Positions 15,611 to 38,401 of a DNA stretch of 64,000 nucleotides are shown here, piece by piece. Source of the stretch: Octopus sinensis. Lineage: Eukaryota. Both the position numbers and the translations under genes were made by a program. The notes beneath the pieces were generated by a model. The model was not told where the DNA came from, did not search any database, and worked only from the letters and a program-made list of their open reading frames with translations. Numbering within the stretch: position 1 is the first letter of the stretch; every line of letters starts with the position of its first letter. The stretch is from the NCBI RefSeq assembly GCF_006345805.1, contig NC_043001.1:41974001-42038000 (forward strand). Reading direction: 5' to 3'.

Positions 15611-15706
15611 GTGTCTATACACACATATATTTGAAAAATATAAAAAAATAAAATGTATTTTGCTCATTATTTACATTTGACGGATATTTGTCCTCATCTT
15701 TGTTGT

Positions 15707-16488: not shown

Positions 16489-16534
16489 GACACCTGATGA
16501 AGGCTGGAGGGTATATCAGCCGAAACATGTTAAC
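16489..16534 (+). ncRNA. Minimal type-I hammerhead ribozyme motif (cleavage-site region damaged)
   Basis: GACAC CTGATGA A GGCTG gagggtatat CAGCC GAAAC atgtt: intact core and a 5-bp stem II. Confidence 0.7.
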
Positions 16535-16844
16535 AAAGAAGATGAGGACAAATATCCGTCAAATGTAAATAATGTAAATAATGTACATAATCCCTCATCT
16601 CTTAAATATAGAACTGTATGTATTTTACTATTATGCAAACAGCACACAATCTTCTCTTAACTTTGAGAAATCTCTGTTGCTATCAGAGATCATAGCTCAA
16701 ATTTTCTCCATTCTTACTCTAGCTACTATGCTTTCGAAACAACATCTACTACTGCTAATTAGGTCACCTACACAATAGAGATTGACACCTACTTTTAGGG
16801 AGCCTGCCAACCATTTAAAAAATTTCCACATTTACTCTTACATA

Positions 16845-17740
16845 CAAGGTGATATCAAAAGGTTCCAGGGTAGTTATCTTTAATAAAAAATAATATTTAT
16901 CAAAGTTTTAACACCATCATCTTTGAAATTGTCACCTTGTGCAGCAATACACCAGTCCCAGCATTCCTGGCACTTTTGGAATCTGACCTGGATATCATTT
17001 TCTATAAGCAAGTCAAGGATCTTTTGTGATTCATTCTGGATCTCAACAATGGTGTTAAAATGGTGACCTTTGAGCTGCATTTTCATCTTGAGGAAGAGAT
17101 GGAAGTCCATAAGTGCTAAACATAGCTGGGTGGAGAAGCAATACCATGTTGTTTTTGGTGAGAAACTCACAAGTGAGGAGAGCTCGGCGATAGGGTGCAT
17201 TGTCATTATGGAGAATCCAATTCTTTGCACTCCACAGATCTGGTTGCTTTCACTGAATGCCCTCCCTCAAACACTTCAAAGCATCGCAGAAGAACTCTTG
17301 ATTGGTGGTCTGGCCCTGGAGGATGAATTATCAATGCACAACACCACATTTCCGGGGGTGACACTTGTGGAAGGTCTTCCAGATTGATCATCGTCAAGGG
17401 ATGTTCTTCCACTTTTGAAGCATCCATGCCACTCAAAACATAGCACACGATCCATTGCCTCATCACCATAAGCTTGCTGAAGCATGTTCAATGTCTCTGT
17501 AGCAGATTTCCCAACTTTAACACAAAATTTCATGTTGGTTCCTGTCCATGACAAAATCACAGACTACAGCATAACATGATCACAAAAACACAAATTTCAC
17601 AACTTGCAAAGAAAACACAATGTCACTTGGCACACTACCTCATGGAGATCACTGCTAGCTCTCACTGTGCACACAACTATGTGCTCCCATCTGTTGACAG
17701 CATACAGAGCTAGTCCAGGAATTTCTTGATACCACCTCAA
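16845..17740 (-). mobile_element. Mariner transposon, internally deleted and frameshifted
   Basis: N-terminal MKFCVKVGKSATETLNMLQQAYGDEAM..FEWHGCFKSGRTSLDDDQSGRP, a (W)ILHNDNAP-like motif, C-terminal WDWCIAAQGDNF, and ~30-bp imperfect TIRs (aggtgatatcaaaaggttcc / ggaatttcttgataccacct). Confidence 0.85.
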
Positions 17741-19105
17741 ACATGTCTTCCGCCTTTATCAGTAAACCTGTGTTCTAACTGCACCTCTTGCGCATCCATA
17801 GTTTTACATTGGGTACATCATAAAGAATTTCTACCGATTCTATTTCAGAATATCAAGATGGCCATTCCTTAATATAACAGGAGAGTGCTGGTTTTGCCTA
17901 GTTCATTATAACATTTTCATTTCCTACATTTACTTTGAGGGTCTGAATTCTCAATTTTGCTTTCACCTTTAAAATTTCTTCTCTACATCTTTGACAGATT
18001 TGGCTTAGAAAACCAACTTCTGATCTGTGGCTGGATAGTTTCTAATGCTGGTGTTGCAAATAGTTAAATGATTTGCATCACAAAACTCCAACAGACTTGA
18101 TCTCATATAATTCCTTGTGCCATGCTCATAGTTTTCACATGAGTATATACAGGAGTAGTCATTGTGGTGTTGCTCGACAAGTCCATTAAAGTAGTGATAA
18201 ATATTAACTTCACACTAAGCATTATTGAAATTTTTATTATCCCACACATCCTCTTTATTAATAAGAATATGCATCCGCAATGTTTTTCTTTCTACACAAT
18301 ACCACAAGGCATGTTTGAAACCCTCACAACCCTCCCCTATAAGAAACACTGCATTAAAGTCACAAACTATGATAATGAGGATATTCTCATTTGTTGTTAG
18401 TGCTGTCTGTCAATGCACATTATAGAAATGATTGTTTTACTCCTCTTTCAGTCCTGATTCAGTGATCACCATTTCAGTTGTGGTGTCCATGACTAGTCTA
18501 AGCTTAATAACAAAAAAACAAACAAAAATATTTACAACTACAAATCAAAAGAGGAAGAAAATTCATTGAAAATTTACTACATGAAAATAAGTGTCCAACC
18601 TTATCAAATGATAAAATTTCAATAGTTTGAATTTTAAGAGAAAGAAAAAAAATTTTCATTTCTGAGAGAAGTTTTGTAAACTATTCTCAGTGATTATAAT
18701 TAGTACAGAGAAATTGCTTATATAGGTTTAAGTATTAACATAGCTACTTTCCATCAGAGTCTAAACCCATCAAAATCAGTGATACTAAAGTAATACCAAC
18801 ACTAGCTATGTATTTTCAATAATTTCAACTTGAATTGCATCTTACCAATGGCTGTAAAATCATGCAACCATTTTAATTCTCTTATAGCTATGCCATAGCT
18901 GCTGACAATGCCAAATGTTAGAAATACCAACATTGTGAATGATATGTTTAGAGTGAAATACAATAAGTTTAATCTTAATTTATAGAATTTAGTATCAGCT
19001 TATGAAAATTCTATTGTATTGTTCATTTGTTCGAATAAGTACATACATTAGATAATTAGCAGCTACTAATCATACACATATCCCTATCGCAACTTCACAC
19101 ACACA

Positions 19106-19485
19106 CAATCTCTCATCTGAAACTCTTAGGATCAGGCAACTTTCGAAATTTGACAATGGGCATTCAGTATATTCATAGGGTGTATTCTTGGTTATAAGAT
19201 GTGGTTCTCGCGAATTCAGATTTATATGTTTCTATTATACATTGAACTCAAGTTCTGAACCAATAGTAATCTCATTGCAGTGTATTCATAGGTCTAGCCT
19301 AGGAGGGCATGTGGATGTTTTTACAAACTTAGGGTAGAAGCATATCTAACCAAGATGTAGAGACACAACTGTCATAGGTTGAGCATAGTTTGCATCCAAT
19401 CATGTTTGGCACCAAACATGAGTTTTATTGTGATGACTTCTGTGAGAAGACTTTTGGAGCTTTCAGAATTTCAGATTAGAAATTG
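19106..19485. mobile_element. Tigger/pogo-like MITE, degraded
   Basis: Imperfect TIRs caatctctcatctgaaactc / gaatttcagattagaaattg; the ends resemble Tigger-type ttttggagc.tttcggatt motifs. Confidence 0.5.
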
Positions 19486-20297
19486 CATGTGTGTGTGCGC
19501 ACACACACACACAAAATAAGATATTTCTATTTGTAGTTTTCTAAACATTTCTCAGTGTCATTTTTATGAAATTCAATAATTTGGGATACTCTAAAGAAAT
19601 CACTCAATTTTACCTAAATTTTCTTTGTCTCATTATTCCTTTATTAATTCCACTATATTTACTTATTAAGAGTACTTTACTCTCTTCACTACCTTAGTTG
19701 ACAGCTAACCATCTTTCATTATGTCAGAACTAGCCTAAGTATCCCACCTCCCAATATACAAATAACACTGCTTAAATATAATGCACAGCCTGCTTAACAA
19801 CAGGCTGCATATTCTCCATTAATTTTAAAAGCCCCATGACAGAGGAAATAACAATACCTTAACACATTTTCATGAGATATTTATAAAAGCTATCCCCCAG
19901 TCTCTCTCTCTCCCTCCCTCTCTACTTACAATCTTGTGACAAAACAAAACAACAGCCACTATTAAATCAGAAAATAAAACAATTATTCTTCAAATTCCAT
20001 AGTGTGGAAAATCTAAAAATACAATACACGTCAATTATATCTGTCCTCTTTATATAAATCATAGATTTCAATTCATTTGAATCTATTCAGAAAATATATG
20101 TAAGTTATGAAATAACATTGTGTGCATGCTTGTGTGTATATTATATATAAACGTTTTTTTTTTAATAATAAAAACAGTTTTACATTCAACTGCAGGATTA
20201 CTCAATTTTTTAGCAAGAATAGTATTAACAGTCGCTTCAAAGTTTCAGCCAGGTAAGACATCATCAGATGACAGTCCAATGATAAATGTATATTATA

Positions 20298-20493
20298 CAA
20301 GGAGGTGCTGAAAAGTTCCTGGTTTTGAAGGTATTGTGAAAGGCCTACTTGGAAGCTCAACCTTCCAAGTTCTTTTATAGGACTTAGAAAAACTGAAGGA
20401 CCACTTTAACAAGTGTGTGAATCAGAGGGGAATATGTTGAATAAAATCATAATTGATTCTCCTGTATTTTCTTTTACCCAAAACCAGGAACTT
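20298..20493 (+). mobile_element. Mariner-derived MITE
   Basis: TA|caaggaggtgctgaaaagttcctggttttg ... caaaaccaggaactt inverted ends, with an internal remnant of the transposase C-terminus (KCVN..GEYVE*). Confidence 0.7.
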
Positions 20494-21004
20494 ATAAAAA
20501 ACTGATAAGAAAAATTTCAAAAACAGCACTTCTTATAAACTAATATAACAAATAAAGAACAGTGGATACAAACTTTCAATAAAGCATTGATGTAGCGTAC
20601 GGATAATATTGCCCTTACAATCTAAGATTATCGAACTACTAAATACATAGAAAAAGAAATGATACAGAAACATCGTAATAATATATGTCTAGAGAGAATG
20701 ATTATAAGTTAGATGTTACATCTTCAAATAATCATATCAATTTCAAGAATTAGATTGAGTTGGGATTATCCCGTTGTATTTCTGGAAAGGTAATCAATTT
20801 TGTAAAGAATAAATAATTTTATTATCACCATAGTGCCTAGTGAGGTGAGATGAAAATTGTGAGGCAAAATTAAAACTTGCCACCAAATTATTAATCCAAC
20901 AGCTATAAATACAACATAAAAAGAACAATACTGAATAAATTTTACTCCATTTATTTTAAAATAATATTTAACTAAAACTATGTTAGAAATCCCAACCATT
21001 CCCA

Positions 21005-21235
21005 GTCAAGGAGTTTTGTCTTGCAAGTTGCTTGGTGACACTATCAGTGCTGATGCCAAATAAAAAGCACCCAGTACTCTCTGTAAGGTAGTTGGCATTA
21101 AGAAGGGCATCCAGCTATAGAAACCATGGAAAAACAGACAATGGAGCCTGCTGTGGCTCCAGGCCTTACCAGCTCCTGTCATACTGACCAACCCATATCA
21201 GTATAAAAAAAGGAACATTAAATGATGATGATGAA
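21005..21235 (+). mobile_element. Short repeat carrying the RTE 3' tail
   Basis: aaaagcaccc..gttggcattaagaagggcatccagctatagaaac..ccaacccat..ttaaatgatgatgatg. Confidence 0.7.
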
Positions 21236-21320
21236 ATTGAAAGAAAAGAATAATCACTTCTTTTCTGTCTTAAAGTAATGTTAATGATGTTTAATGCCAT
21301 TTTATCTACATAATTTTTAG

Positions 21321-21535
21321 TTAGCCCTTTTGTTACCATATTTCTGTTGAAATACACTGACTTTATTTCAATTAATTTCAAAAATAATAAAGAAAATAGC
21401 CAAATAACTTTGTCATTATTAAGCTAATATTTGGAATATAGATTAACAAAATTTTCATAGCACGATTTATTTTATATCAGTTTAAAACACATAAGAGGCA
21501 GTCTCAGGTGGGTTGATATCAAAAGAATTACATGA
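21321..21535. mobile_element. Degraded piggyBac-type MITE related to 7963-8183
   Basis: Starts ttagcccttttgttacc, ends gatatcaaaagaattac, with internal similarity to the reverse complement of the 7963 element. Confidence 0.4.
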
Positions 21536-21543
21536 ACCATAGT

Positions 21544-21546
<3 letters not shown>

Positions 21547-21584
<38 letters not shown>
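21547..21584. repeat. (TA)n microsatellite
   Basis: Seen directly. Confidence 0.95.
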
Positions 21585-21593
<9 letters not shown>

Positions 21594-24016
21594 ATAATAT
21601 GAGAATGATAACTATACAGTTCTCATTGAAAATTTGATCATTAATTCCATGAGATTTCCTTGACTTTTAAAGAATTCTCCAGAACTTGTTTTAAGTTTTT
21701 TCTTCGCATAAATGTTGGCAAAGAATTTGAATATTGCATAATGTTGTTCATTTAAAACAAACACTTATTTACATCTTTGTTCTTTTTAACAATCATATCA
21801 CTGATATATGATGAAACCCTTTCATGCTATGCTTCACTTAAATACCAGTGTTGTAACTGACTGTGTATGTCAAAATTAAGGTTAGTAGAAACATTGAATG
21901 TCATCATTATCACTGGAACAAATAGAACAGTAAACAAATTGTTGCAAAATAATTAATTGGAGTAGAAAGTTACAATAGTATTAAAGCAAAAATTGTTGTA
22001 GAAGAAAAGCTAACAAAAAGAATTGTAAGTAAATGGGCATGGAATGTCAAATTTGACTATTTTCATTCATTTGACATTATGAGAGGGTGTTTTCAATTTA
22101 GAAGTGCATTTGATGATAAATGTTTATAGGCTATGGAGGTTAGAACATGCTTATATAACCAACATAATAAGCAAAAGGTAAAATTTAATGAAAATAACCT
22201 TTAAGATTTTTAAAACAATAAACAGGTATATATGGTGTTTCTTATGTGTGTGCAAAAAATTCTGCCAAATAGAGAGCGTGGCTATAAAACTGGAAGCTTT
22301 ATGAAACCAAAATACAAATACAGATGCAACCACTTCTTTTAATTATAAGTATTTCCTACAAGAATGAACTCAGAAGATGTTTGGAGTGAGAGAGGGAAGC
22401 TGAAAGGATGCCAGCACTAATATTGAAGAAGTCCATCCCAAATGATGAATTTTATTAATGATGTAGAGAAGGTAGACTAATTTAAATTTGGAATTAAGTG
22501 TACTGCTAGTAACTTCAAAATTACTATAACGTGTACACTGTCAAATCTTCTAAACTACTACAATATATACATTGTCAATAACTATCATCACAACTACTGT
22601 ATAATGTGCCCTTAAACAAATCAAATTCATATTATTTTACTGATTTAAACTGAAAGAAAAAAACCAACTTCTATGCCATAGCTGTTTATGAACAGAAGAG
22701 TCATTTAGGTAACGTCTACTCTAACAATTAGAGGGAACTACCTCTGCTTAAAAAGATATAAAAATATTACAAATATCAAAACAATAATGGTACAAAAGAA
22801 AAATTACAAATTAGAAAATGGCTATCAAAGACCTAAGAAATGTGCATTTATATACATAAAAGTAACCTAGCCATTAATCTAAAAATACAGTCTCTCACTG
22901 AAAACTATACTTCTTTTTGGGGCAGGTAGTCACATTATTTTCATACATATTTTTGCATAAGTCTATGATTTTTTAAGGCTTTAATATTTTTGGGGAAACT
23001 TTTTATGCCATGCACACAAATGAAAGCATTGCTAGCAGAGGACAAATAACTAATGTCTGTTGTTTGGTCCCGTCACTGTCTTTAACAGAGAACCTAGTTT
23101 TAAGTAAAATAAACAGGTTTCAAACCTTCCCCAAAAATGTGTTTTCCAGTTGATACATAGCTTCAGCTTCTTGGTGTGAAGTAAATAATCCCCTCTGTAA
23201 ATATCAGTCTATCTTGGGCAATATTGCCAGAGCATCTGGTGTCTATTTCTGATAGGTAGGAGAGATGAGACATATAGAAATTAGTGTATTGCCTAAATGC
23301 ACAAGAAAACAATCTCAGGTTTTTTTTGGCTAGTAGTCCAATAGCAATCTACTCAACCGTTTATTTTTTTCAAAACTAGCTCTTTAAGTAAGTTGGGTAA
23401 TGTAATTCACTATTGTAAGCAGTGGTTATACAAACTTTCAAATAATTCATAACTTTTCTTTGGTAAGAAAAGATGATCTTTATAGACTGGAATTCTGTTT
23501 TAAGAACACAGAAACTAGAGATGTGCAAAGGACAGACCATGTTAACATGAGAATAAGATAAAAAAAAAGTAAGACTAGCCGTAACTGTTATACAACCTTG
23601 CTACCAGATTTCTATTTTGCTTCTAAGCTTAAAGTACATTGCAGTGTTTGCTTCAGTCAATCAAAATCTAAATACCATTAAGTGAATATCTTTCAAATAC
23701 ATACAGCAGCAAAATACTCTTTCTTTGAAAAAAAAAAACCTGCAACATTATAATTTATATTTTATATCACACCATGAATGCTCTATCTACTTAGTGATAG
23801 TTACTGAAATTAGAGTCTATTGAGATCTCTTAAGATTTATATAAAATTTGAAGAAAGCTGCACACAATGCCTATAGATATGTATATACCCCAAAAGAGTG
23901 TGTAAAAATTAGAAATAGTTTAATATCTACAGATAGTAAATAATAAAAATGTAGATTAAGGTTTTTTAATTGATGTTTTTATGGAAAATAGAATTTTTGT
24001 GGGATATAGTATGAAT

Positions 24017-24680
24017 AAGCACAGTTATGGTTGTATGGTTAAGAAATTCACTTCCTAAACCACTTGGTTTCGGGTTCAGTTCCACTGTGTTGTATCTAGG
24101 GCAAGTGTCTTCTACTATAGCCCCATGTCAAAGTTTTCTGAGTGGATTTGGTAAATGGAAACTGAAAGAAGCCCATTGTGTATGTAAGCATGTCCTTGTT
24201 TTGACATTACCTGATAATTGTAAACAAGCATCACCATCACACTAAAAGTGTTCATTTCCTATCAACTGCATAAAATGTGTACAACTAAGGGGAAGTAGTA
24301 CTTGGAAACAGGTGAGGGATGGCATTTTTTTTCCTGCATAGGTACAGGCACGGCTGCCTGGTATGAAGTTTGCTTCCCAATCATATGGTTCTGGTCCTAC
24401 TGCATGGCACCTTGGGCATGTGTCTTCTATAGGCCAAAGCCAACCAAACCCTTGTGAGTGGATTTAGCAGCAGAAATTAGGGGGGGGGGAGCTATGTATG
24501 TGTACGTCACCATCACCATCACTTTACAATTCATGTTAGCTTGTGTCCCCCATAAACTTAGTGGTTCAGCAAAAAAGTGACAGGCAGAATAGTATCAGGC
24601 TTAAAAAATCAATTCCTTTGACTAAAACCCTTCAAGGCAGTACCTTAGCTTGGCTGTAGTCTAATGACTGAAACAAGATA
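24017..24680 (+). mobile_element. Two tandem tRNA-derived SINEs (first with a truncated RTE-type tail, second with a CR1-type tail)
   Basis: Heads at about 24017 and 24343. The first ends cttggaaacaggtgagggatggca, the second ends cttcaaggcagtacc..gctgtagtctaatgactgaaacaag. Confidence 0.75.
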
Positions 24681-25179
24681 GATGGTATAAGATGCCCTGT
24701 ATGTGAGTTCAATTAACTAAGATAAATTCACAAAAGTTGAAGGGCTCAAAAGTAAAGGGAAGAGCTACAAAACGGGTCTTCAAATTTATGTTAAAGGCTT
24801 TTCAAAAGTGGAGAAAATGAATGTTTTAAATATTCATGTGTATAAAGTGAATTGGGATGTGCACACTTGATCTGAGGCAATTTTATCCTAAGAGTATGTT
24901 CCCATTATAAAGTATGCGGACAGCAGAATTCAGATCTCTGAAAGCAATAAAATGTTAAGTGATAAACACAGGTATGGCATATGGGGAAGTGTCGAATATA
25001 GACTTGGGCTGGTCAATAGCTTTTGACTTAAATTTGGTAGATGGAAACTGTGCAGAATCTTATTACGACAGAACGACTTAAATACAACTAACATGTTTTA
25101 AAATGTTTTTCTCGGAAATGCATATAGTGAGACTTTCGAAACCTCACAAGATTTTCTGTACCAAGTTTAAAATGCTTAC

Positions 25180-25380
25180 TTGTCACTCTCGTCGTCAGAG
25201 ATAAAGTAAACCAGTGATTAGATCATTGGAGGCTTGTAACTAACGACGCCGTTGTTCACCAATTGTGATACACTATGAGAAAGACAGAAACGGTTAGTTT
25301 GTTTTTTCCACAGTTCTCCCACTCCTAAAACTAGTTGGAATATATATTGTAATCGGTCTTCAGAATAGTCCTATATGATT
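25180..25380 (-). other. Candidate exon (alternative first, poison or UTR) ending at a strong phase-2 donor
   Basis: Donor CAA|GTAAGC at 25180/25179. A long polypyrimidine tract with a TTAAC branch-like motif and GAG acceptor lies at 25381. Stops occur in the PSD frame (TAG near the start, TAA at 25220-25218). Confidence 0.35.
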
Positions 25381-27246
25381 CTCCAAAAAAAAAAAAAAAG
25401 AAAGAAAGAAAAGAAAGCATAAGGTTAAGAGTACAAAGAATGCTTTCCTGGTTGGAAGAATTCTATTTTCCTTTTTGAACCTCTTAGGCGATTTCAGACA
25501 ATAACTCAGATTTACTGATCGTAAACAACAGGGAGGGTGTGATGGTAATGTAAATGTTTCTTCTAGAATATTCGGGTGAATACCAGCAAATAATATTAAT
25601 CGCTCGTGAATGCTCTGCAATACAGCTTAGTAAGCTAATAACAGCATGTAGGAGTAAAAAACTGAATAACAAATAATAACATAAACATCGCAATCATTCG
25701 ACGTCTGTATTAATGTTGAACAAGTAACATTACGAAAAGACTGCCAGAACCAATGCAAGTTTGAATATTCAAAAATAAAATTTCATCGACGGTAGTTAGA
25801 CCTAATAACAAAAGCGAGGGAGGGAGAGGGAAGGAAAGAGGGAGACACTAATTGTTTTAAAAACAGAAGCTGCTAAGTTACCGAAATTTTGAAGAATAAG
25901 ATGTTTGAAGATACTTTTACTTCAGTGGTAGAAAAATAAAAATCAGTTTCTATTAGAGACAAGGCTGAGTTTAGTAGAAAATGTATGAGCAATTTGACTA
26001 AACTACTGTCTATTACTGGTACTTGCATACACGTTTTATTTTGATATCGAGAAATGAAGGGTAGCCCGACCATGCTGATAATCGGACCCAGAACTTAGAG
26101 AGACGAATTAAATACTGCTAAAAATTTAATCCAGATATTCGTAATTTTTGTCAACCAAAAATAAATAACCAATAGGAGATCTAGGATTTTTATTAACGAA
26201 AATTAAATAACCAATTTCTATATATCTAGTTTCCGATTATATTAAAGAATACGAATATGAAAGACCTTAATTCGGTACGAAGCGTCAACTAAGTCACCAG
26301 TTTAGCAAATACAAAACAATGAAACTAACGTAAAAGAAAAATTACTCGTGATATTCCCGGAACAAATTTCTTATTTTAGTCGCAGTCGCATGGAAGTAAA
26401 TAAAGATTTAATAAATTATCTTTTCACAATAATTTAGCTACTGGCGACTGGGCATTCTTGTTGGTCTAATTTTTATCATATATATATTAGTATTAAAAAC
26501 GAGATAAAAACTATTCGACACATATTTTTGGAAAAAGGCATGAACACCATAATCTAATATCTCCCTTCCCGAGAAATCTTACTCTTGTATATGGTTAAAA
26601 GAAATCAATATTTGATTCTGTATCATAGCTCGGGCCTTTGTAAAAGTATGTACGCCCGATGTATTACTGTCCCACCCCCTCTACAGACATGGACTGTTTT
26701 ATCATTCTAAGAAATTATGATTACCATTATTTGTGCAGGTGATCGATTATACATACCACCACCACCCCAGTGCTAGCAAAAGAAGAAAAAAAGAGGTAGA
26801 AGCGCTTGTGCCTATCCCGCCAAAAACATTACATAAGCTTATTCGTGTATATGCAAAATTTTAGTTTTATATTTGTCTTTACTTTCACTCGTGGGAAAAG
26901 AGAACCAGTTATAGGCTGCAGTCACCAAAGCCTTCATTATTATACCGAAAATGTCCTAAGAAATTGATGTCCCAACTTATTTTCTTTAAAATTATCAGCC
27001 TTGTGCCTATGCAAGAAAGTATCAACATCATTTTTAGAAAACAGCTATGTTAAAAGGAATTAGTTTAATTGAACAAAATATTTTAATAAAAATTATAGAA
27101 GAGAGTATTTTACTACCTGTTAATGTTTTAGTGTCAGATTGTTAAAACTAAATGACACATAGTGTGGAAAATAAACAACATTAAAACTTAAAAACAAACA
27201 GAAAACCAGAAACTAAACTTCAAAGGAAAACAGACATGTTTATTAC

Positions 27247-27311
27247 CTGCGTACTTTTTCTTTGATCACTTCAAGATAGCTATCTGCTGAACCATTGTCG
27301 GCAGGAACCAT
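27247..27311 (-). CDS. PSD: Candidate alternative first coding exon of PSD (MVPADNGSADSYLEVIKEKVR + AG), in frame with the Sec7 exon
   Basis: ATG at 27311 with an in-frame TGA upstream (27338-27336), 21 codons + 2 nt, donor CAG|GTAATA at 27247/27246. Phase 2 matches the Sec7 exon. Lies in a CpG-rich patch. Confidence 0.65.
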
Positions 27312-30300
27312 TGGCGAAGATGAAAACAAAAAGAATCAGGCACGCGTAAAAATCCAACCTCAGAAGAGATAGCTTTCACTAGATATATCGATGTTTTCGT
27401 TCAAGAGTCACACACCACCCTAGTTACACCATGTTGTTATTGTGATCGAGTGGAATAAACTAAATATGGCTAAGCACTTGTGATGCACCGGCAACAATGC
27501 CGTCCAAATAGAAGGCATGGCATTATGTTATTGACAATGTGTGTAGCTAAAGTGGGCGTAGAAGCTAGAGGCTCAGTTTGAGTTTGTATAAATGTTAAAT
27601 CACTGTGTTACCAGACCATTAAGAAATGATTAAGCAGACAAACAATGCCGTAACGAGAAGAGATGTATAGTTTCAACAACGACAGCTAAATTACTAAGAT
27701 GAGAGAGCTCCTGTTGTATACAGAATGCATCATGCCACTCTTGAAATCCAGCAGCAACAAAGCTTACAAAAACAAAAGGGGGCGAAAAGAAGTGGCTGAG
27801 AGTCTCCGGTTCAGTCGTAACTAGTTGCCTGCATCCCAACAGTTCGTTGCTGCAGCAGTTATAGTAGTAATCATACGAGTGAACTGATGTCTATATCAAC
27901 AGCAATATGTACAATCAGCAGCCAGTTCCTGCTGCTGTTACTTCCTGCTGCTGCACTTAATGTTAAAAATATTTCTCAAATCTTCCTATTCTAAGACACA
28001 CTTGGATCTTTGAGCATAACATTCTCGTCCAATGACTAAATGTTACCTGCTATTGGTTACTTATGCCTTAATTTTGATAGCACTCGAGATACCCAACATA
28101 TGTATTATTTCGTATAAATAAGTTACATCTAAATATTTTTTCAACTCACAAGGGAAAAATATATTTTCTTCTACATCACTCTTCAGCCAGTTATATCAAA
28201 CACAGCCAATCTGTCATCTATTCTTATGACTACATGAGCGCTACCAATCTATAACTATGTCATCGCTTTCATTTATTAGAACAAATGATGATGCTTGCAT
28301 TTTTTTATTTCCATATTCATTCGGCTTTTAATGGTTTTAGTCACTGGATTCCAGTAACCGTCTTAAAATGTTAACAATGTAACTTATGTATTTAAAGAAA
28401 GAAAGAAAAAAACATTGAATTAAGAGAATTCTGCAGATACGTGTTTTTTTGTTGTTTTTTTCTTTTGCCAGTATCCACTTCGTTCGTTATTTAATGGATA
28501 ATTACACTGGCTGGCTTAGTATATAGCTTAATGATAGTAACCTGAACATATACAAATAGCTTTTATCATGTTAGACTGCATGAAAATATTCTAACGTCAG
28601 TATGCGTAACTTGCCTGAAAGCCGAGATCTTTTGTTACTCAAAAGAAAACAGTTTTAGATATGAAACTTATAGGAAGGTGTTTTTACTAATGTAAAATTG
28701 AGAACACTGAGCTAATGATCTGATATTTTCTAGGAGAGGAATTACTTTTCCAAAGAACCCAGTGGAATAACTTTTTAAACAGATAAAGAGGATCAGCTGA
28801 GATTGATGTGTTTTAAAAATACTTTACATGGGATGAGACTTTTTTTTCCCCCACTTCATTTCAATGAAGGAAAAATATGTATAATGTATGTAAGCTTTTG
28901 AAAAACAAATGCCATTGAGCTGACAGATAGAAATGTCTTGGAAAAATGCTAATTAGCAAAAAAAAATAACAAACCACTGTATTAATAAAAACTGTCCTGT
29001 TTAAACGGCTTAAAGACACTAGGCAAATATGTACAGAGCCAACTGTTTTTCAGGAATTTAATTGCCAAAGAGCAGATTTAGTGGTGAGTTTCCAAAAAAA
29101 ATTTTGCACTGTTGCTGAAAGAAATATTGTGAGGAGAGGGCCAAGAAAGAGATTTAGTAGTTTCTGAGCAAACATTAAGGTTACTTATTGCTCTATTGTT
29201 GTTGGTTAATAAAAGGAAATAAACTAAGGACTCAAATAATGATATTACTTAAAATTTTGAAATATGTATTTGAAGGTGAGATTAGGTGAAATTGAATACA
29301 GTATCGACTATGGTTAAGAGAAGTAATGTCAAGTTTGTCACAATTGAAAACAGGTTTTTCATGAAATTGGTTGAAGTAAGTTTGGGATATCAACAAATGT
29401 ATTTAGAAAGAAATAATTTGTTAGTTAATAAAATATATATCATTTGCCTCAACAATTCTCTATATCTAAAGACAACTATATACCTGAGTCATATTTGGCT
29501 TGGAATAATCATTCTTTTGCAATTAACACATAAATGGTTAAGAAGTTCACTTTGCAACCACAATGCCCTGGGTTTGATCACAAAGTGTGGCATTTTGGGC
29601 AAATATAATTTTTTATACCTTTAGATCCACTTGCTGCTTGTGACTGAAAATGGGTAAACGGAAACAGTACAGAAACCCGTCAGGTGCATTGTACTTGTAA
29701 TTCAAAAGGTACAGCCTTATTAGACAAAGTATCACATTGATTCTTCCTGAGTAATATCTATGGAATACTCAATCAATCGTATGTTAATTCAGGAGCAGGT
29801 AATTCAGATGCTTGGACAACTGAACCCTTGTAGTCAAATGCTAGAGTTCACCATATATTTATTATTTTATGCTTGCCTTCCATGCTCCTCTCCTAGTTGG
29901 GTTAGAGGCTCAGATGTCACTCATGTTATACTTTTGGTTTAGCTTCTATAGCTGAATGCCCTCTGTAACACCAACAGCTTCACAGAATGAAATGAGTGGA
30001 TTTCATTGTGATCTCAGCACTAAAGAGTCTGTCTCGTTCTCAACAAGTATAAAGAATCATCACTATACGACCTTGTCTCCACTCATTCACTAACCCCTTT
30101 CAAAGGAGTACTGGTTGCATTTTGTGATACTAGCACTAGTGAGGTTGTTTTGTACACTTCAAGACAAAAACAGTCATCCCTTCTTTACATCGACTCCATT
30201 TATAAGGGAAAAACTTATCAACAGAGTATGAAGAGAGATACAGAGCAATTAGAGAGACTGGGAAGGAGAAAAGGAAAGTGCTAGAAGGAGTATGAAAGAA

Positions 30301-31019
30301 AGAAAGAGAGAGAGAGAGTAATGGTAGCAAAAAGGTGATAGATAGATGCAGAAACAGGCAGTTGTAAGAATGTCAATAATGATTAACCTAGGGAGAGGGA
30401 GCAATGGCTGGCAGTATAGGATAATGTTAGTGGGTAAGAGAGGCTGTCAGTGGTGGGTAAGAGAGAGGTGATACTTGAAGGAAGAGTGATAGCTAGCAAT
30501 ATAGGAGAGTAAAAGATGCATCAGATCCAATCAATCCCTCTTTAAGCAGATATCATGATCAGAGAGACATCATAATGGCAGCTACATATCTGTTGGTGAG
30601 AGAGCAAGGAGTAAATCAAATAAATAGATCTGAGGCAATCTCTCATTACTCAGGCATCATGATCAGAGAGGCAAAGAGAGATACAAACAAAAGAAGAATG
30701 TGTGTGTGTGATACATATCAATGAAATCAGTATAAGAGGGTAATGTTAGCTGGTAAATGAAGGATCTCAATAAACGAGTAACTCAAGAGAGAGAGAGAGA
30801 GTGTGTGTGTGTTGGTTGGCAGTAGAGTAAAAGAAGTGGTATCTTGGAAACCAACAAGTTTGATGTAAAGCTACTTATACAACATGATAGGAAGGAGGAA
30901 AAAATAGACACAAATGGTGGTAGAGAGGTATTGAGTGTGGAAGATCTAATGTTTCTCTCAATCCAAGGGTGACATGATAAAGTTAAGAGAGAGGGTATTG
31001 AATCAGCACAAAAGGCAGC

Positions 31020-32050
31020 TGGTACAAAATAGGTAAAATGCCAAATAATACATACATATACACACAAAACATATTTCAGCTGATATCACTGTTCACATTT
31101 TAATGTGTTCCACCAATGCTTGCATGAATGGTCAGATCTTTTCCAGCATCATATACCTCCAATCAATGTAGCTCTTTGTAATCTTCATGAGATGCAGCAT
31201 CTTGACATCAGTTTTCAGCACTTCATCTCAAGTGTTCTGGGTTTCCTTTTCCATAGGTTCCATTCACTTTGAGTGCTTAACACTTCTTTATGCAGCTGTC
31301 ATCATCCATATCACATGCCTATACCACAACAGTTGTCTCTCTTGTACACATCTAATTCTCTTTATTTCCACTTTTTCTCTCAATTCATTTGTATCACATG
31401 CATGTATACTAATATATTTACACATATCTCAAACCATGCTCACTTCATTACTCACTAGTCTTGAATACACATCTGCAATCAAAACTCACATCTCTCTACC
31501 ATGTAGAGCTACACTGTACACAAGCATCAATTTGAGAGAAAATCCCTCTATTGCTAGCTGGAGAGAAAGTTCCTTGAATTTTTCCAGCCCATTCTTACTC
31601 TAGCTACTATGTTCTCAAAACACACAACTCTACAACCAATTAGGTTGCTTAGATAACAGAAGCTACTAACTACTAGGGAATCATTTTAGACATTTGAGAG
31701 TAACTATTTCCTGCAAACTCTTTGTGTTTATTACACCTGTGTACCTGCACATATGGAGTCAACCATCTCTGTCAGCCTGCTCTTCTTTACTCATTGTTTA
31801 CACCGGGTCAACTGCATGGAATTTTCACCTATTCCTTTTTCTAAACAATCTTGGCCCTATCTCTGATAATAGCATGTTTTTGTCTTCAATCCTATTTACT
31901 AAAACTTTGATCTTTGCTCAGTTTTGCTTAAGGCTTTTCAGTTTTGGGTTTTGCTTCCATGCCTGAAATTTCCTCTCTAAATCTACAGTGTTATAGTTGC
32001 ATGCACGAGTTACCATGGGAAGCCAATTAGTTTTTGTGTGGAGGTTGTGG
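31020..32050 (-). mobile_element. Old RTE LINE relic (RT C-terminus to tail)
   Basis: DLERKFQAWKQN..KSLKQN, ..KFKELSL.., and tail remnant catgcaagcattggtggaacacattaaaatg. Confidence 0.6.
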
Positions 32051-32099
32051 AAAGAAATGTGTCTGCATGGATAATGGTTCACTTGTGCTAAATGAGGAT

Positions 32100-33048
32100 G
32101 CAAAGAGACAAGTTTGGAGACGTCACTATGAAAGGTTGCTCAATAAAGAAAATGAATGGGAGAAAGAGAGTCAGGGAAAAGCACCACTGATGCTATATTT
32201 CTGGTAAGACAGCTGCAGGAGAAATACCAAGCCAAAGGTAAACCTCTGTACCTGGCTTTCGTTGACATGGAGAAAGCCTTTGACAGAGTCCTCCGATCCC
32301 TTTTCTGGTGGTTAATGAGGAAACTAGAGATACATAAATGGTTAGTGAGAGCTGTGCGAGCCATGTACAGGGACACTGTCAGTAAGGTGAGGGTTGGCAA
32401 TGAGTACAGTGAAGAATTCCGGGTAGAAGTAGGGGTCCACCAGGGTTCAGTCCTCAACCCCCTCCTATTTATCATAGTTCTCCAAGCAATAACAGGAATT
32501 CAAGATAGGATGCCTCTGGCAGCTCCTCTATGCTGATGACCTTACTCTAATTGCTGAGTCCCTATCAGAACTATAGAAGTTTCAAGTATGGAAGCAAGGA
32601 TTAGAATCGAGGGCCTTAGAGTCAACCTAGCTAAGACCAAAGTCCTAATAAGTAGGAAGGCAGACAAACCACATACCCCTTCAGGTGGATGGCCCTGCTT
32701 GATATGTAGAAAAGGTGTTGGTAGAAACTCTATAAGATGTACCCAGTGTAAGCTATGGACACATAAGAGGTGCACCAATATGAAAGGAAGGATAACTGGG
32801 AAGATCTCGGCAAGCCAAGTGAGACCATAACCTCGTGGCCATAAAAAGCACCATTTGAGCATGGCTGTTGCCAGTACCACCTGAGTGGCCCTCAAGTTGG
32901 TGGCACGTAAAAGCGGGCATCCAGCTGTAGAAACTTTGCCAGATCAGATTGGAGCCTAGTGCAGCCATCTGATTTGCCAGACCTCAGTCAAATTGTCCAA
33001 CCCATGCTAGCATGGAAAGCAGACGTTAAATGATGATGATGGTGATGA
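32100..33048 (+). mobile_element. RTE LINE with two internal deletions (RT domains, partial PHD finger, 3' tail)
   Basis: GKSTTDAIFLVRQLQEKY..LAFVDMEKAFDRV..VGVHQGSVLNPLLF, LYADDL, WPCLICRKGVGRNSIRCTQCKLWTHKRC, and tail ttaaatgatgatgat. Confidence 0.9.
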
Positions 33049-35599
33049 TATGCTGAGTTTGATATTTTAATTGTTTACTTGATTCTCTTTAAAGGGACAA
33101 TATCTGTCCACAACAAATGCAGTTTTCTTGTTGCAACTATAGGCTGATTTGCTAACAATATCTATTACAAACTTCACTCAGCAAGCCATGCCTTTTGCAA
33201 AATTGGACTTGATCAACTTGTCAAAATCTAAAACCTATAAATATCAAATACAATACAAATGGTTCTGTTGCTGCTACCAGAGAAATGTGGTTCACATTTC
33301 ATGACAGCAAGGAGACCTTAGAGGAAAAAGTCATCATCTTGGGTTCATCAATCTCACTGCTTGCTGTCTAACTGATTGTTGAACCCAAGTTTCACAAGCA
33401 TTAAATGTTTGTGAACAGACTATTTGATTTTTACGCAGTTCATCTTTATAAAAGACTACTTTATCATGTCAAAACTGTACATCTTTTGCAGCACTCCATG
33501 TTACAACTTTGCTCTAGTTACTACACCTGGTCTTTCTTTCCCAGAACATTAGTTCCTTCACTGCTCATGTCATTTCCACAGGTTCAAGTGGAACATTAAT
33601 AATATCAATCTCACTAGTTTAAGAAGGTTTTTAAAGACCATAGGTACTACCTCTTCCTCTAGACACACACACACACACATACACAAATGGAGATAGTATC
33701 AATTAAGTACAATCTGGTTTGGAAACATCTAAAGCATATTACAACTGATGGTAAAAAAATATTAAAAAAACCTCAGTGGAAAAGGTTTTGTTGGACAAGC
33801 CTACAAAGACAGTTATAGACTGGGTTGTGCAAAACATTTTTTTTTAATACCACATTATTTATCAGAAGGCACTTAGGGGAAAACATTTAGTCTATTGCTT
33901 AATACAAACCAATAATAACAGTAAATTTTATTTGATTGCATACACTCAATCATCAGAGTTTCAAACAATTTTGGAAGAATTAGAAGTTAAATAGAGTTCA
34001 TTGTATCATGCTAATTGTAAGATAGCTTAGTAATGGTAAAGTTTTTTTTTAAACTTCAGATGGAGATTGACATTTTGGGGGGAAATGAGAAAAACTGTGC
34101 TCAACTGCAAATGGTTGCAGAAATTGGAATTTTTAGCTACCTTAACCATGCATTTTAATGAGTTCAGTCTTAGAAAACAACTCAGAGCTAATATGCAACA
34201 TAATATTCTGCAGTGAAGATTTTTCAATGTAGATTAATCTTTTAATCCCAGCTTATAAATAACTTCAACCACTTTCTCTATGAAAAATACAACCAAGAAG
34301 GAAATCCATTTGCTCTCGAATATGCTCATGACATTCTCACTTGTCTGAAGCCACAGTTTCAATAGAGTTTGTTAAATCCCAATGAAAATATGAAAGCATT
34401 AAAAAGAAAACATGACCAACTTTTATAAATGCCTCCTAGGCAAAGGATATGCTTTTTTTAAAGCCCTAAGCTCAGGAATGTGTTTTATCATTTGGCATAA
34501 ACTATTTATGGCGGGGGAGGGGGGCATTTTCAAAGATTACATATATTAATAAGTCAGTGTTAACTGATCATCACTTACAGTTAGTTTTGATTACAGGAAA
34601 CAAGATTTGAACTATTGTTTAACAAAATTTTGTTTCCACAAAAATAGCAACAATTTCAATTGATAGAGCATAGTTTATGTAGGAATCTACTCCAATAATG
34701 AAAAACAAGTGACTAAAAATACGATTTCCATAGCCTGGTACTGTACAATCATAGTCTCATCTCTTATTCAGCTTGTTTCAAGGTTTACAGCCTATTGCCT
34801 AAGAAATAAAATCAGTTCCACTGTATAGCTAAATGTGAACAATTCCTGAATTTTTTATACAGTATTAACTGGAAAACAGCATATTTAGCAAAAATATGTT
34901 ATAACAATGAAAGAAGGGAAAGAACTATGCTTCAGTGTGATAAACAGAACAAGCAAAACTAGTTCACAGCAAAACATGTACCCTAAACCTTAGGTTGAAT
35001 GGACCTTGATTTATTTTTTAGATATAGAACTGTTTTGTAGAGTAAAAAGGGGGAGAGGGAATGAAGTTGTTGAAATAGGTTAAAGAATTATTGAAAGAAA
35101 AGCAAGGGATGTATATGAGTGGGAGTGAGAGGGAAAAAAGAATGAAAAGAGTTCATAGAAAGTATTGGAGTTATGAATTAAAACAGGGCATTCTTTATAA
35201 ATAAGGTGCCAGTTTCACTTTATCAGACTATAGTTGCTTTCACTTTGGTAAGCAAGCATGTCTTAATAGGAATTTTGATGAATTATGATTTTATGATACA
35301 ATTAAATTTTTAATAGTGCTGATTTTGCTCATGTGTTTTTTTGTTACTTCAGGGGTATCCAAAGGTACAGTATTCAATGCATTCTTTACTTTTTTTTTAG
35401 GATGGTAGGCTAAATTTTACCTGTTGTCAGGTTTATACAGTGTTCCTTGGTTTCCAAATTATTCACATTTAAAAAATTGTGCAATCCTTACAAATTAAAT
35501 TTACATAGAGTAATAGAAATTAAAGAAAAAGAAAGAATTTAAAAGAAAGTGAACTTAAATGCTGCATAGAAATTCTAGTTAATTGATAAATTAGAATAA

Positions 35600-36850
35600 A
35601 GTGTTCCAGCAGCATGTGTTTGTGACTTTTACAGTGTTAAAAGCTAAGTTGTTTCAGATATATGCAAATCAAAGAATAAATTGTGACAGCTCTCTTTAAA
35701 AATCAAGAGTTAGCACTAAACACAGCTCTGCAGTGTGTAACAGACAATATATGAGCTGTGTTTAATATGTTCAAGAAAAATGTAGAGTGTGTGAAATCTG
35801 CAAGTGAAACTTTTGGAAAACATGTTAAGGCTTTTTGGAATACAGTTAAGGCTGGGTGGTAGGGCAGTTTAGAAAAAGCAGAGCAATGTGAACAAAAAAG
35901 CCTATAGTGACTCTTGGCACAGTCACTTCACAGACTGAGCTATGTAGAAAATTTTTAAATGAACTTATTAGATGTAAGGACTTTATTTTGTCCAAAGTTT
36001 ATACTGCTGCTGAAACTAACTTGTTCTATTGGGCTGTAAATATTTCACACTACAAACATAAATACAACACTCTTGGTTGCTTTATATGTGCAAATGCTTG
36101 CATCATTTTTAGTCTAGGTGTTAGGGAAATCAAAAGAAACTATGTACATGGTTTCCTTCAGAGATTTTTTTTCTGACTAACTTTCCAATCCTGATGTGAG
36201 ATGCTTTCAGACAGATTTTCTTGCATTATATAAAGCTTCTTGACAATGCCTAATGCTGAGAATTAAATAAATAGAAATTGCAAGATTAAATGTTTTTCTT
36301 TATCACCTTATACATCTTCAGTTAGTCAACCAATGGAAAATGCAATAATTATTGCTTGCAAGAGAGTGTATAAGAATTTTAGAGGGAAAAAAATTATGGA
36401 TGTGTTAGAGGATGAAGAAGATACAAAAGGAACCAGGACACTTCAGAATCGATGAGTCTTACAACTTAAAAATCTGAATTTACACTTCGCAGATGTTTGG
36501 AAGGAGTGGAGTACAACTTTCACAGACTGATGGATGAAATTGTCGAATAATATAGAACCCAATTTGGATTTTGAAGGATTTCAGGCAATAGACTTTTAGT
36601 ACACCTTTATAAATGCTGATAACTGGGATATAACTGAAAGGGGGTCTGTTATCAAGTCCTTGCTAATGAAGAAATTGTGAATTAGGTTCTACTAACAAGA
36701 CAGAAGAAAAAGACATTGAAGAAAGTACAGCAGCATAATCAACACTGCCTGAAATAATGAATCTCACAGACTACACAAGGATATTGCACCTTACTATGAA
36801 CATTTTTGATAGTTCAGAGTGATCATAATGAAGAAAACATCAAAGTTGTA
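35600..36850 (+). mobile_element. Highly degraded Tigger/pogo transposase relic
   Basis: KVYTAAETNLFYW resembles the YNADETGLFW motif; later xCANA and QPMENAII (QPMDQGII-like) remnants, with many stops. Confidence 0.4.
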
Positions 36851-38347: not shown

Positions 38348-38401
38348 CTCAGAAATGTAATAAACAAGGGAAGTGGTTGCTCTGAAAGTATAGCAGCCCA
38401 T
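38348..38401 (-). CDS. Candidate alternative first coding exon (MGCYTFRATTSLVYYISE), phase 0
   Basis: Strong Kozak context aacATGG, in-frame TAG upstream, 18 codons, donor GAG|GTAACA at 38348/38347. It needs a phase 0-to-2 adapter or a more distal acceptor. Confidence 0.45.

What the first reader, a model, noticed from the sequence alone, without database searches (positions are those of the whole stretch)
27247..27311. Intronic alternative first exon that would produce an EFA6 isoform lacking the microtubule-regulating N-terminus
MVPADNGSADSYLEVIKEKVR-R splices in the correct phase onto [12 protein letters not shown]. The product would drop about 580 aa containing the MTED-like and SxIP motifs and also the first Sec7 helices (RLAKRLY..HLCK), but keep the catalytic GETQER glutamate. 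Promoter choice could thus separate the microtubule-inhibiting function from the Arf6-GEF/PH functions. Short alternative-promoter isoforms are known for vertebrate EFA6A and EFA6D; a start inside Sec7 that retains the glutamate is the unusual aspect.
Basis: partly seen in the sequence, partly recalled or inferred. Interest (0 to 1): 0.75.

Follow-up and report, generated by a model that had tools for sequence, protein, structure and literature searches.

The report
Conserved hidden start exon in octopus EFA6
A 65-base start-codon exon with a promoter-like flank lies in the 43-kb intron of the octopus EFA6 gene and is conserved in the paper nautilus, so it is probably a real unannotated alternative start, but no transcript showing its use was found.

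Summary
The window is the Octopus sinensis EFA6/PSD gene on the minus strand. The sequence is as described. ATG 27311 opens 21 codons plus AG, followed by a CAG|GTAATA donor at 27247/27246. It is in the same phase as the canonical donor at 46813, so it would join the Sec7 exon at 3713 in frame.

The ORF and donor alone are weak evidence. Conservation makes the case:
- Against Argonauta hians, this exon plus about 230 bp upstream is the only strong unique syntenic match in the 43-kb intron.
- The ATG, frame, length and GT donor are kept, with 57/65 bases identical and no indels. No substitution falls on a second codon position.
- It lies in the main non-repeat CpG-rich island of the locus, in three species.

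No structured-RNA signal was found.

Evidence against: no annotated or assembled cephalopod protein starts this way. Only canonical splicing (46813|3713) is seen in a transcript.

The product would be 473–487 aa. It would lack the SxIP and MTED motifs and the first two recognisable Sec7 helices, and keep helices E–J, PH and the coiled coil. Retained GEF activity is doubtful.

Verdict: probably a real octopod alternative first exon and internal promoter (about 0.65). Its function is inferred. Moderate interest.

The parts
27247..27311 (-). Candidate alternative first coding exon: ATG plus 20 further codons plus AG (MVPADNGSADSYLEVIKEKVR, then R completed by the A at 3713).
   Evidence: Sequence read and translated. 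O. bimaculoides has one change, E to D. Argonauta has 57/65 identical bases, no indels, and keeps the ATG and frame (MVPADNGSAQSHLELIKEKVR). Only this frame is open in all three species.
27241..27249 (-). 5' splice site CAG|GTAATA, with GT at 27246-27245.
   Evidence: Seen. Approximate PWM score 6.9 bits, against 8.3 and 10.3 for the two canonical donors in the window. Conserved as CAG|GTAAAT in Argonauta, and alignment decays about 20 nt downstream.
27312..27543 (-). Conserved upstream block: putative core promoter plus 5' UTR of the alternative exon.
   Evidence: Part of the only strong unique syntenic Octopus-Argonauta match in the intron: window 27543-27227 against L002 21078-21378, E 1e-53. 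Identity is 165/211 aligned bases with 5 indel events. O. sinensis versus O. bimaculoides identity is 98.7%, the 99.6th percentile of intron windows. The TSS has not been mapped.
27380..27391 (-). Invariant TCGATATATCTA motif, beginning 80 nt upstream of the ATG. It resembles a TATA box or DRE and is a possible core-promoter element.
   Evidence: Identical in all three species. Its function is inferred only.
24900..28700 (.). CpG-rich domain, taken to indicate hypomethylation, that encloses the exon inside an otherwise CpG-depleted gene body.
   Evidence: CpG o/e is 0.5-1.7 here against a window median of 0.19. The orthologous region is the top CpG peak of the 115-kb O. bimaculoides locus (L001 34.2-39 kb). 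It is also elevated in Argonauta (L002 18.5-25.2 kb). As a control, the neighbouring gene's 5' end in Argonauta shows a peak too.
3520..3713 (-). Shared acceptor exon, the second Sec7 coding exon: [12 protein letters not shown]...[10 protein letters not shown]...YNSE. The catalytic Glu codon is at 3599-3601.
   Evidence: A transcript contig joins 46813 directly to 3713. The acceptor is conserved in O. bimaculoides and Argonauta.
46813..48595 (-). Canonical large exon: ATG at 48551, 580 codons, ending HLCK+AA. It encodes the disordered N-terminus with SRIP (48501-48512), the MTED-like FETFVMTGDMII (48243-48278) and the first Sec7 helices (RLAKRLY..HLCKK). The alternative start bypasses it.
   Evidence: It is 100% identical to XP_029636333. 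The exon start is approximate, set by the cag| acceptor read; the transcript contig aligns from 48598.
3714..46812 (-). The 43.1-kb phase-2 intron that hosts the element.
   Evidence: The same intron position in the limpet Patella vulgata is only about 300 bp and holds no such exon.

Best explanation
This is an unannotated alternative first exon of the octopus EFA6/PSD gene, driven by an internal promoter in the 43-kb intron that splits the Sec7 domain. It is conserved across octopods.

Proposed mechanism, with each step marked:
1. Transcription starts within the conserved block of about 230 bp upstream of ATG 27311 (inferred). It probably starts downstream of the invariant TCGATATATCTA motif, which would make 27311 the first ATG of the transcript.
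2. The 65-nt coding part ends at the CAG|GTAATA donor. It is spliced to the next conserved acceptor on the strand, the Sec7 exon at 3713, in frame. The phase is shown; the splice itself is inferred.
3. The product is 473-487 aa, depending on the known C-terminal variants. It lacks the whole disordered N-terminus, including the EB-binding SxIP and the tubulin-binding MTED. It also lacks the segment that aligns to ARNO helices C and D.
4. It keeps Sec7 helices E-J with the glutamate finger, the PH domain and the coiled coil.

The isoform most likely works as a membrane- and actin-targeting PH-coiled-coil module that cannot inhibit microtubules. Its Arf6 exchange activity is probably weakened or lost. 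In function it would be closer to vertebrate EFA6As/EFA6D-s than to a full GEF (inferred).
For: Gene and phase:
- The window encodes O. sinensis PH and SEC7 domain-containing protein, 100% identical over 644 aa.
- The canonical and alternative donors share the same phase.

Conservation:
- In Argonauta hians the only strong unique colinear match within the intron is window 27543-27227 (75% identity, E 1e-53). The other intronic hits are dispersed repeats, non-colinear or inverted, apart from one weak 73-bp colinear match.
- Within that match the exon is 57/65 identical with no gaps. The upstream part is 165/211 identical with 5 indel events.
- The ATG, the reading frame and the GT donor are kept, and only this frame is open in all three species.
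- Of 9 substitutions, 6 fall on third codon positions, 3 on first and none on second (P about 0.03-0.04).
- Similarity decays about 20 nt after the donor.
- Between O. sinensis and O. bimaculoides the block is 98.7% identical against an intron median of 93.7%, the 99.6th percentile.

Promoter signature:
- The block sits in a CpG o/e island of 0.5-1.7 against a background of 0.19.
- The orthologous region is the strongest CpG peak of the 115-kb O. bimaculoides locus, and the region is elevated in Argonauta. A known gene 5' end there shows the same signature.

Other points:
- No upstream acceptor is conserved. The only AG with a pyrimidine tract, ctgAG|GT, is lost in Argonauta.
- No ATG lies between the TCGATATATCTA motif and 27311.
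- Rivals were tested: no Rfam match and no covariation.
Against: - No transcript or protein evidence exists. All database models for O. sinensis, O. bimaculoides, O. vulgaris and Argonauta hians begin at the canonical ATG.
- The three predicted short isoforms are absent from a collection of 15 billion sequences.
- Searches in the 55-150 aa and 350-840 aa length ranges found no cephalopod protein with this N-terminus.
- The one transcript contig examined splices 46813 directly to 3713.
- The donor is weaker than the canonical ones, and the Kozak -3 base is C.
- The most conserved 24-mer, GCCAATGGTTCCTGCCGACAATGG, contains CCAAT-like and SOX-like (ACAATG) motifs. Part of the conservation could therefore be regulatory rather than coding.
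- The exon is less conserved than the canonical exons: 88% against 91.5-92.8%.
- Only three species could be compared, and two of them are close relatives.
- A Sec7 domain that starts at helix E has no known precedent and may not fold.
Confidence: 0.65

Rival explanations
1. The block is a conserved intronic cis-regulatory element: an enhancer, a CpG island, or the promoter of a non-coding or antisense transcript. The ATG, open frame and GT donor are incidental.
For: - The block contains TF-like motifs (CATTGT, GCCAATGG, GACAATGG, TCGATATATCTA) that are invariant across species.
- No short isoform is annotated or assembled despite RNA-seq-based annotation in several species.
- CpG islands also mark enhancers.
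Against: - An ATG-ORF-donor of this quality occurs about once per 10 kb in the intron (4 in 43 kb). About 0.03 would be expected in a 317-bp block.
- In Argonauta it also keeps the ATG, frame and GT, and has no indel, while the adjacent 236 columns have 5 indel events (P of none is about 0.25).
- Substitutions avoid second codon positions.
- Conservation stops just past the donor.
Confidence: 0.2
2. It is a real 5' exon, but of a separate nested transcript. This could be a lncRNA, a micropeptide mRNA or an mRNA that uses another acceptor. It would not join the Sec7 exon, so no truncated EFA6 would be made.
For: The exon-like conservation and promoter signature apply equally to this reading. 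A weak second colinear match exists about 4 kb downstream: window 23272-23200 against L002 30540-30612.
Against: - The weak match has no evident splice sites or open frame.
- No other conserved exon-like block lies between 27247 and 3713.
- Exact preservation of the phase that fits 3713 is most simply explained by splicing to it.
Confidence: 0.08
3. It is an internal element of canonical transcripts, either a cassette or poison exon or a recursive-splicing site that helps remove the 43-kb intron.
For: Long introns often contain recursive sites. In Octopus a pyrimidine tract followed by AG|GT (ctatctcttctgAG|GTtgga) lies 64 nt upstream of the ATG.
Against: - That AG is GAT in Argonauta, so the site is not conserved.
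- The sequence upstream of the conserved CAG|GTAA donor is purine-rich, which does not fit a ratchet site.
- Read from the canonical phase, that candidate exon hits a stop.
- The transcript contig shows direct 46813|3713 joining.
Confidence: 0.04
4. It is a chance open frame in neutral intron sequence, or a conserved structured RNA (miRNA or snoRNA) hosted by the intron.
For: By sequence alone the ORF and donor are unremarkable: the intron holds 242 phase-2 candidates.
Against: - It is the only strong unique Octopus-Argonauta match in 43 kb and lies in the 99.6th identity percentile against O. bimaculoides.
- No Rfam hit appears even at E<=1 or at gathering score over the whole intron.
- The consensus fold has a positive (unfavourable) covariation term and many broken pairs.
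Confidence: 0.03

Closest known systems
Vertebrate EFA6As (PSD1 short isoform) and EFA6D1s/2s (PSD3 short isoforms), cited in PMC6522047 from Sironi et al. 2009
   Same: Short isoforms of an EFA6-family gene that share the C-terminal PH domain and coiled coil and lack the long N-terminus. EFA6As reportedly acts in dendrite formation, probably independently of Arf6. The likely functional outcome is similar: a PH-coiled-coil module without full GEF function.
   Different: Those isoforms lack the Sec7 domain entirely. The octopus product would keep about two thirds of it (Pfam HMM 58-183), including the glutamate finger. There is no sequence similarity in the unique N-terminal peptide. The octopus isoform has not been seen as RNA or protein.
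Vertebrate PSD3/EFA6D isoforms of about 490-520 aa (for example human isoform 201, 513 aa)
   Same: Short isoforms with their own N-termini that drop the long N-terminal region and are close in size to the predicted 473-487 aa (PMC6884004).
   Different: All start 30-45 residues upstream of RLAKRLY and keep the complete EFA6-type Sec7 domain. The octopus exon splices in after ...HLCKK and removes that segment.
Canonical invertebrate Efa6 (Drosophila Efa6, C. elegans EFA-6) with an N-terminal MTED and SxIP
   Same: The octopus canonical isoform has SRIP (aa 14-17) and FETFVMTGDMII (aa 92-103), which match the fly MTED peptide. [quoted passage not shown]
   Different: The candidate isoform would remove precisely these motifs. 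Whether flies or worms make a comparable isoform that starts inside the Sec7 domain was not examined here.

Membership tests
EFA6/PSD family gene (the host gene) | Sec7 domain followed by a PH domain and a C-terminal coiled coil. | tested here: met
   Pfam Sec7 (E 3e-44), PH_9 (E 7e-46) and PH on P0060. Named PH and SEC7 domain-containing protein by NCBI.
EFA6/PSD family gene (the host gene) | Invertebrate-type N-terminal MTED motif and SxIP. | tested here: met
   FETFVMTGDMII (aa 92-103) compared with the fly peptide APRFEAYMMTGDLILNLSRT; SRIP at aa 14-17.
Alternative first exon with internal promoter | Start codon, open frame and consensus 5' splice site in the phase of the downstream acceptor. 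| tested here: met
Alternative first exon with internal promoter | Purifying selection on the exon across species: ATG, frame and donor kept, with a coding-like substitution pattern. | tested here: met
   Compared across O. bimaculoides and Argonauta hians. The sample is small, with 9 substitutions.
Alternative first exon with internal promoter | No functional upstream acceptor, so it is a first exon rather than an internal one. | tested here: inconclusive
   The only plausible acceptor in Octopus is not conserved in Argonauta. Absence of use cannot be shown without RNA data.
Alternative first exon with internal promoter | Promoter signature at the site. | tested here: met
   CpG o/e island in three species, with a control at a known gene 5' end, plus a conserved upstream block with a TATA-like motif. 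This is indirect; methylation and the TSS were not measured.
Alternative first exon with internal promoter | Transcript evidence: junction reads, a cDNA or an annotated isoform. | tested here: not met
   No annotated isoform. Exact look-ups were negative. Homology searches were negative. Proteins of 150-350 aa and raw reads could not be searched.
EFA6As / EFA6D-s type short isoforms | Lack the catalytic Sec7 domain but keep PH and coiled coil. | tested here: not met
   The predicted product still matches Sec7 HMM 58-183 (E 7e-39) and keeps GETQER. PH and the C-terminus are kept.
Catalytically competent Sec7 ARF-GEF domain | Glutamate finger and the F-G-H groove helices are present. | tested here: met
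   GETQER and everything downstream are retained.
Catalytically competent Sec7 ARF-GEF domain | Intact N-terminal helical subdomain supporting the fold. | tested here: not met
   The canonical EFA6 domain already starts at HMM position 30, and the short form starts at 58. The lost 25 residues align to ARNO chain positions 45-69, which I take from memory to be helices C and D. Folding and activity cannot be tested with these tools.

The most novel reading that the evidence does not exclude
Octopods evolved an internal, CpG-island promoter inside the greatly expanded Sec7-splitting intron of EFA6. The same intron is about 0.3 kb in a limpet and 27-48 kb in octopods. The promoter would produce a stable isoform whose N-terminally truncated Sec7 domain (helices E-J, capped by the new peptide ...LEVIKEKVRR, which partly mimics the lost ...SDVSRHLCKK helix) still binds Arf6. 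It would act either as a minimal GEF or as a dominant-negative trap. Promoter choice would then uncouple microtubule elimination from Arf6 signalling in particular tissues, for example the nervous system.
Probability: 0.15. Interest if true: 0.6.

Novelty: new variant of a known kind. Interest (0 to 1): 0.4.

Why it matters
In flies and worms, EFA6 limits axon growth and regeneration through its N-terminal microtubule-eliminating motif. Its Sec7-PH-coiled-coil half acts on Arf6 and cortical actin.

A conserved internal promoter that removes the MTED and SxIP half would give octopods a natural way to separate these two activities. It would also be a natural test of how much of a Sec7 domain is needed for function.

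The practical points are two. First, an apparently functional exon and promoter is missing from current cephalopod annotations. Second, in these heavily CpG-depleted gene bodies, combining a CpG-island scan with Octopus-Argonauta alignment picks out candidate hidden promoters.

If RNA data show no use of the exon, the element is still the one deeply conserved non-coding block of this intron and a candidate enhancer.

Tried and rejected
- Protein database search with the 86-aa alternative N-terminus. It returned only single-exon ORF fragments, the best 83% identical over the Sec7 exon alone, and none had the new peptide.
- Search with the 478-aa predicted isoform. The tool returned proteins of 352-836 aa. 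The best was 66% identical, so no cephalopod short isoform exists in that length range.
- Exact look-ups of the three predicted isoforms. All were absent.
- Exact 20-mer scan of JGI metagenome contigs. It gave two unrelated chance matches.
- A more distant cephalopod contig, L003, with a big exon 74% identical at the DNA level. It carries only 10 kb downstream of the big exon. nhmmer, tblastn and blastn found no copy of the exon there, which is uninformative because the intron is probably longer.
- O. vulgaris locus. No DNA was returned because the gene range exceeds 100 kb.
- Liolophura protein. Not on record.
- Patella vulgata. The orthologous intron is about 300 bp and holds no alternative exon, so the element is not pan-molluscan.
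- Rfam scans and the RNAalifold consensus fold. No RNA family and no covariation.
- Recursive-splice-site and cassette-exon readings. Rejected because the acceptor is not conserved.
- Young transposon as the cause of the CpG island. Not supported: the region aligns uniquely and colinearly to O. bimaculoides, apart from one short repeat near 24.1 kb, and has no TE-like ORF.
- Structure prediction of the spliced short isoform.
- A moth gene model, P0183, starts MPLGLSPPI-NEFS at the same boundary. I judged it a probable gene-prediction artefact and not evidence.

Full report
**What the window is.** The minus strand encodes the N-terminal 644 residues of Octopus sinensis "PH and SEC7 domain-containing protein isoform X1". 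This is XP_029636333, 100% identical, and it is the octopus EFA6/PSD orthologue. O. vulgaris differs at one residue.

- One large exon runs from ATG 48551 to 46813. It encodes 580 residues of mostly disordered N-terminus plus the first recognisable Sec7 helices (RLAKRLY...HLCKK).
- The next coding exon is 3713-3520 ([12 protein letters not shown]...GETQER...YNSE).
- A Logan transcript contig from a closely related octopus (L006, run SRR3401912) joins 46813 directly to 3713. So 3714-46812 is a single intron of 43.1 kb in the main isoform.

The N-terminus carries SRIP (aa 14-17) and FETFVMTGDMII (aa 92-103). The second clearly matches the Drosophila microtubule-elimination peptide APRFEAYMMTGDLILNLSRT (PMC6884004).

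**The observation.** ATG at 27311 opens 21 codons (MVPADNGSADSYLEVIKEKVR), then AG, then GTAATA. The canonical donor also carries two bases (AA|GTGAGT). Either donor therefore joins A|AAT GAC at 3713 in frame, giving K-NDFS or R-NDFS.

An in-frame stop lies 9 codons upstream of the ATG in Octopus, and no in-frame ATG precedes it in any of the three species.

On sequence alone this is weak evidence. The intron holds 242 ATG-initiated phase-2 open frames of at least 15 codons that end at a GT. Four have a donor at least as good on an approximate PWM built from general knowledge, and only this one has 21 or more codons.

**Comparative evidence.** I fetched the whole orthologous gene from O. bimaculoides (L001) and from the paper nautilus Argonauta hians (L002).

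*O. bimaculoides.* The intron aligns almost throughout (82% of it) at a median 93.7% identity. The 300-bp windows covering 27214-27563 are 98.7% identical, which is the 99.6th percentile. The exon has one change, GAA to GAC (E to D).

*Argonauta.* The intron is essentially unalignable. Most hits are dispersed repeats that also match elsewhere in the locus. The exceptions are:
- one strong unique colinear match, window 27543-27227 against L002 21078-21378 (75% identity, E 1e-53);
- one weak 73-bp colinear match near 23.2 kb;
- one short inverted match near 10.4 kb.

The strong match is the candidate exon plus about 230 bp upstream and about 20 bp downstream. Within it:
- The 65 exon bases are 57/65 identical with no gaps. 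The upstream part is 165/211 identical with 25 gap columns in 5 events.
- Argonauta reads ATG GTT CCT GCC GAC AAT GGC TCT GCA CAA AGC CAC CTT GAA TTG ATT AAA GAA AAA GTA CGC AG|GTAAAT, which is MVPADNGSAQSHLELIKEKVR.
- The ATG, length, frame, phase and GT donor are all kept. The other two frames contain stops in every species.
- Of nine substitutions, including the O. bimaculoides one, six are at third codon positions, three at first and none at second.
- Similarity decays just past the donor.

**Promoter-like context.** The gene body is strongly CpG-depleted, with a median o/e of 0.19. The region 24.9-28.7 kb has o/e of 0.5-1.7.

- The orthologous region is the highest and broadest CpG peak in the 115-kb O. 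bimaculoides locus.
- The region is also elevated in Argonauta.
- In Argonauta the 5' end of the neighbouring Ribosomal_S11-domain gene shows a comparable peak. This serves as a positive control that such peaks mark promoters there.

The region aligns uniquely and colinearly between the two Octopus species, apart from one short repeat near 24.1 kb, and has no transposon-like ORFs. The other CpG-rich stretch of the window (52-57 kb) does contain such ORFs.

The upstream block contains an invariant TCGATATATCTA that begins 80 nt before the ATG (TATA/DRE-like). It also holds several invariant short motifs. No ATG lies between TCGATATATCTA and 27311.

**Rivals tested.**
- *Structured RNA.* No Rfam match at E<=1 around the block, and none at gathering score across the intron. 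The consensus fold has no covariation support.
- *Cassette or recursive exon.* The only acceptor-like site in Octopus (ctgAG|GT) is GAT in Argonauta. Read from the canonical phase, that exon would hit a stop.
- *Enhancer with an incidental ORF.* This remains the main rival. The most conserved 24-mer, GCCAATGGTTCCTGCCGACAATGG, contains CCAAT- and SOX-like cores.
  - About 0.03 ORF-plus-donor candidates of this quality are expected in a 317-bp block.
  - The ATG, GT and frame would also have to be retained, with no indel in a block that otherwise accumulates indels.
  - On my rough estimate the joint probability is of order 10^-3.

**Evidence against use of the exon.**
- Every database model for O. 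sinensis (X1-X3), O. bimaculoides (X1, X2), O. vulgaris (three models) and Argonauta starts at the canonical ATG. They differ only at the C-terminus.
- The three predicted short isoforms (487, 478 and 473 aa) are not in the collection of 15 billion sequences.
- Homology searches returned no cephalopod protein carrying the new peptide, in the roughly 55-150 aa range or the 352-836 aa range.
- Proteins of 150-350 aa and raw reads could not be searched.

If the exon is used, it is probably used at a low level or in tissues or stages that have not been sampled.

**What the product would be.**
- Pfam places the canonical Sec7 match at HMM positions 30-183 and the short form at 58-183.
- The 25 lost residues (ARLAKRLYNLDGFRKSDVSRHLCKK) align to ARNO chain positions 45-69. 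From my memory of the ARNO structure these are helices C and D.
- The short form keeps helices E-J with the glutamate finger, the PH domain and the coiled coil. It loses SxIP and the MTED.
- MAFFT aligns the end of the new peptide (LEVIKEKVRR) to the lost ...SDVSRHLCKK columns, matching the V and the terminal basic pair. This is suggestive only.

I therefore regard retained GEF activity as unproven and rather unlikely. The safest inference is a PH-coiled-coil membrane and actin module that lacks the microtubule-inhibiting part.

**Comparison with known isoforms.**
- Vertebrate PSD3 short forms of about 490-520 aa all start 30-45 residues before RLAKRLY and keep the full Sec7 domain (PMC6884004).
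- EFA6As and EFA6D1/2s lack Sec7 altogether (PMC6522047).
- A start inside Sec7 that keeps the catalytic half would be a new variant.

It is also lineage-restricted. The same phase-2 intron is about 300 bp in the limpet Patella vulgata and has no such exon. Many invertebrate contigs show the same exon boundary before N[DE]FS.

**Verdict.**
This is very likely a functional conserved element and probably (about 0.65) a genuine alternative first exon with an internal promoter.
- Its expression and the claimed retention of Arf6-GEF function remain unshown.
- Junction reads or 5' RACE would settle it.

Noticed in passing
window 10000-10660 (minus strand of the gene): A second very highly conserved intronic block between O. 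sinensis and O. bimaculoides: 98-99% identity against a 93.7% median, the highest in the intron. A 67-bp piece matches Argonauta L002 34700-34763 in inverted orientation, next to a CpG o/e peak there. No Rfam hit and no obvious ORF.
   Followed up: partly
window 23200-23272; L002 30540-30612: A weak colinear Octopus-Argonauta match (75% over 73 bp) about 4 kb downstream of the candidate exon. No clear splice sites or open frame.
   Followed up: partly
window 48551-48590: A short upstream ORF (ATG ACT AAT GGC CAA ACA GAA GGA ACC AGA GTT TGA) in the 5' UTR part of the big exon. Its TGA overlaps the annotated start (TGATG). A better-context ATG (caagATGg) lies four codons later, so the true canonical start may be Met5.
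   Followed up: no
L006 1-322 (Logan transcript SRR3401912): The first 322 nt of the canonical transcript's 5' UTR match neither the window (15 kb upstream of the ATG exon) nor the 10 kb upstream in O. bimaculoides. The canonical promoter and first exon therefore lie more than 10-15 kb further upstream.
   Followed up: partly
window 51100-59600: A cluster of retroelement-like ORFs (reverse-transcriptase-like stretches at 58.4-59.5 kb and 51.2-52.1 kb). It includes a G+C-rich (55-60%), strongly GC-skewed element at 53-56 kb that is not CpG-depleted and has long ORFs, flanked by (TG)n/(CA)n microsatellites at 52.1-52.5 and 56.7-57.5 kb. These look like young insertions upstream of the ATG exon and are partly absent or rearranged in O. 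bimaculoides.
   Followed up: no
window 16880-17560 and 42900-44200: Degenerate transposon remnants inside the intron. One is mariner-like (frame-shifted ORF fragments such as ...LNMLQQAYGDEAMDRVLCFEWHGCFKSGRTSLDDDQSGRPSTS). The others are RT-like fragments.
   Followed up: no
window 32916-33056, 3291-3490 and other sites: A short interspersed repeat family present many times in the octopus and Argonauta loci on both strands. It accounts for most of the non-syntenic BLAST hits.
   Followed up: no
P0183 (Phthorimaea operculella gene model, 411 aa): A deposited moth EFA6 model begins MPLGLSPPI-NEFSKAVAEEY, at the same exon boundary as the octopus candidate. It may be a prediction artefact, or a hint that starts at this intron recur in other lineages.
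   Followed up: no
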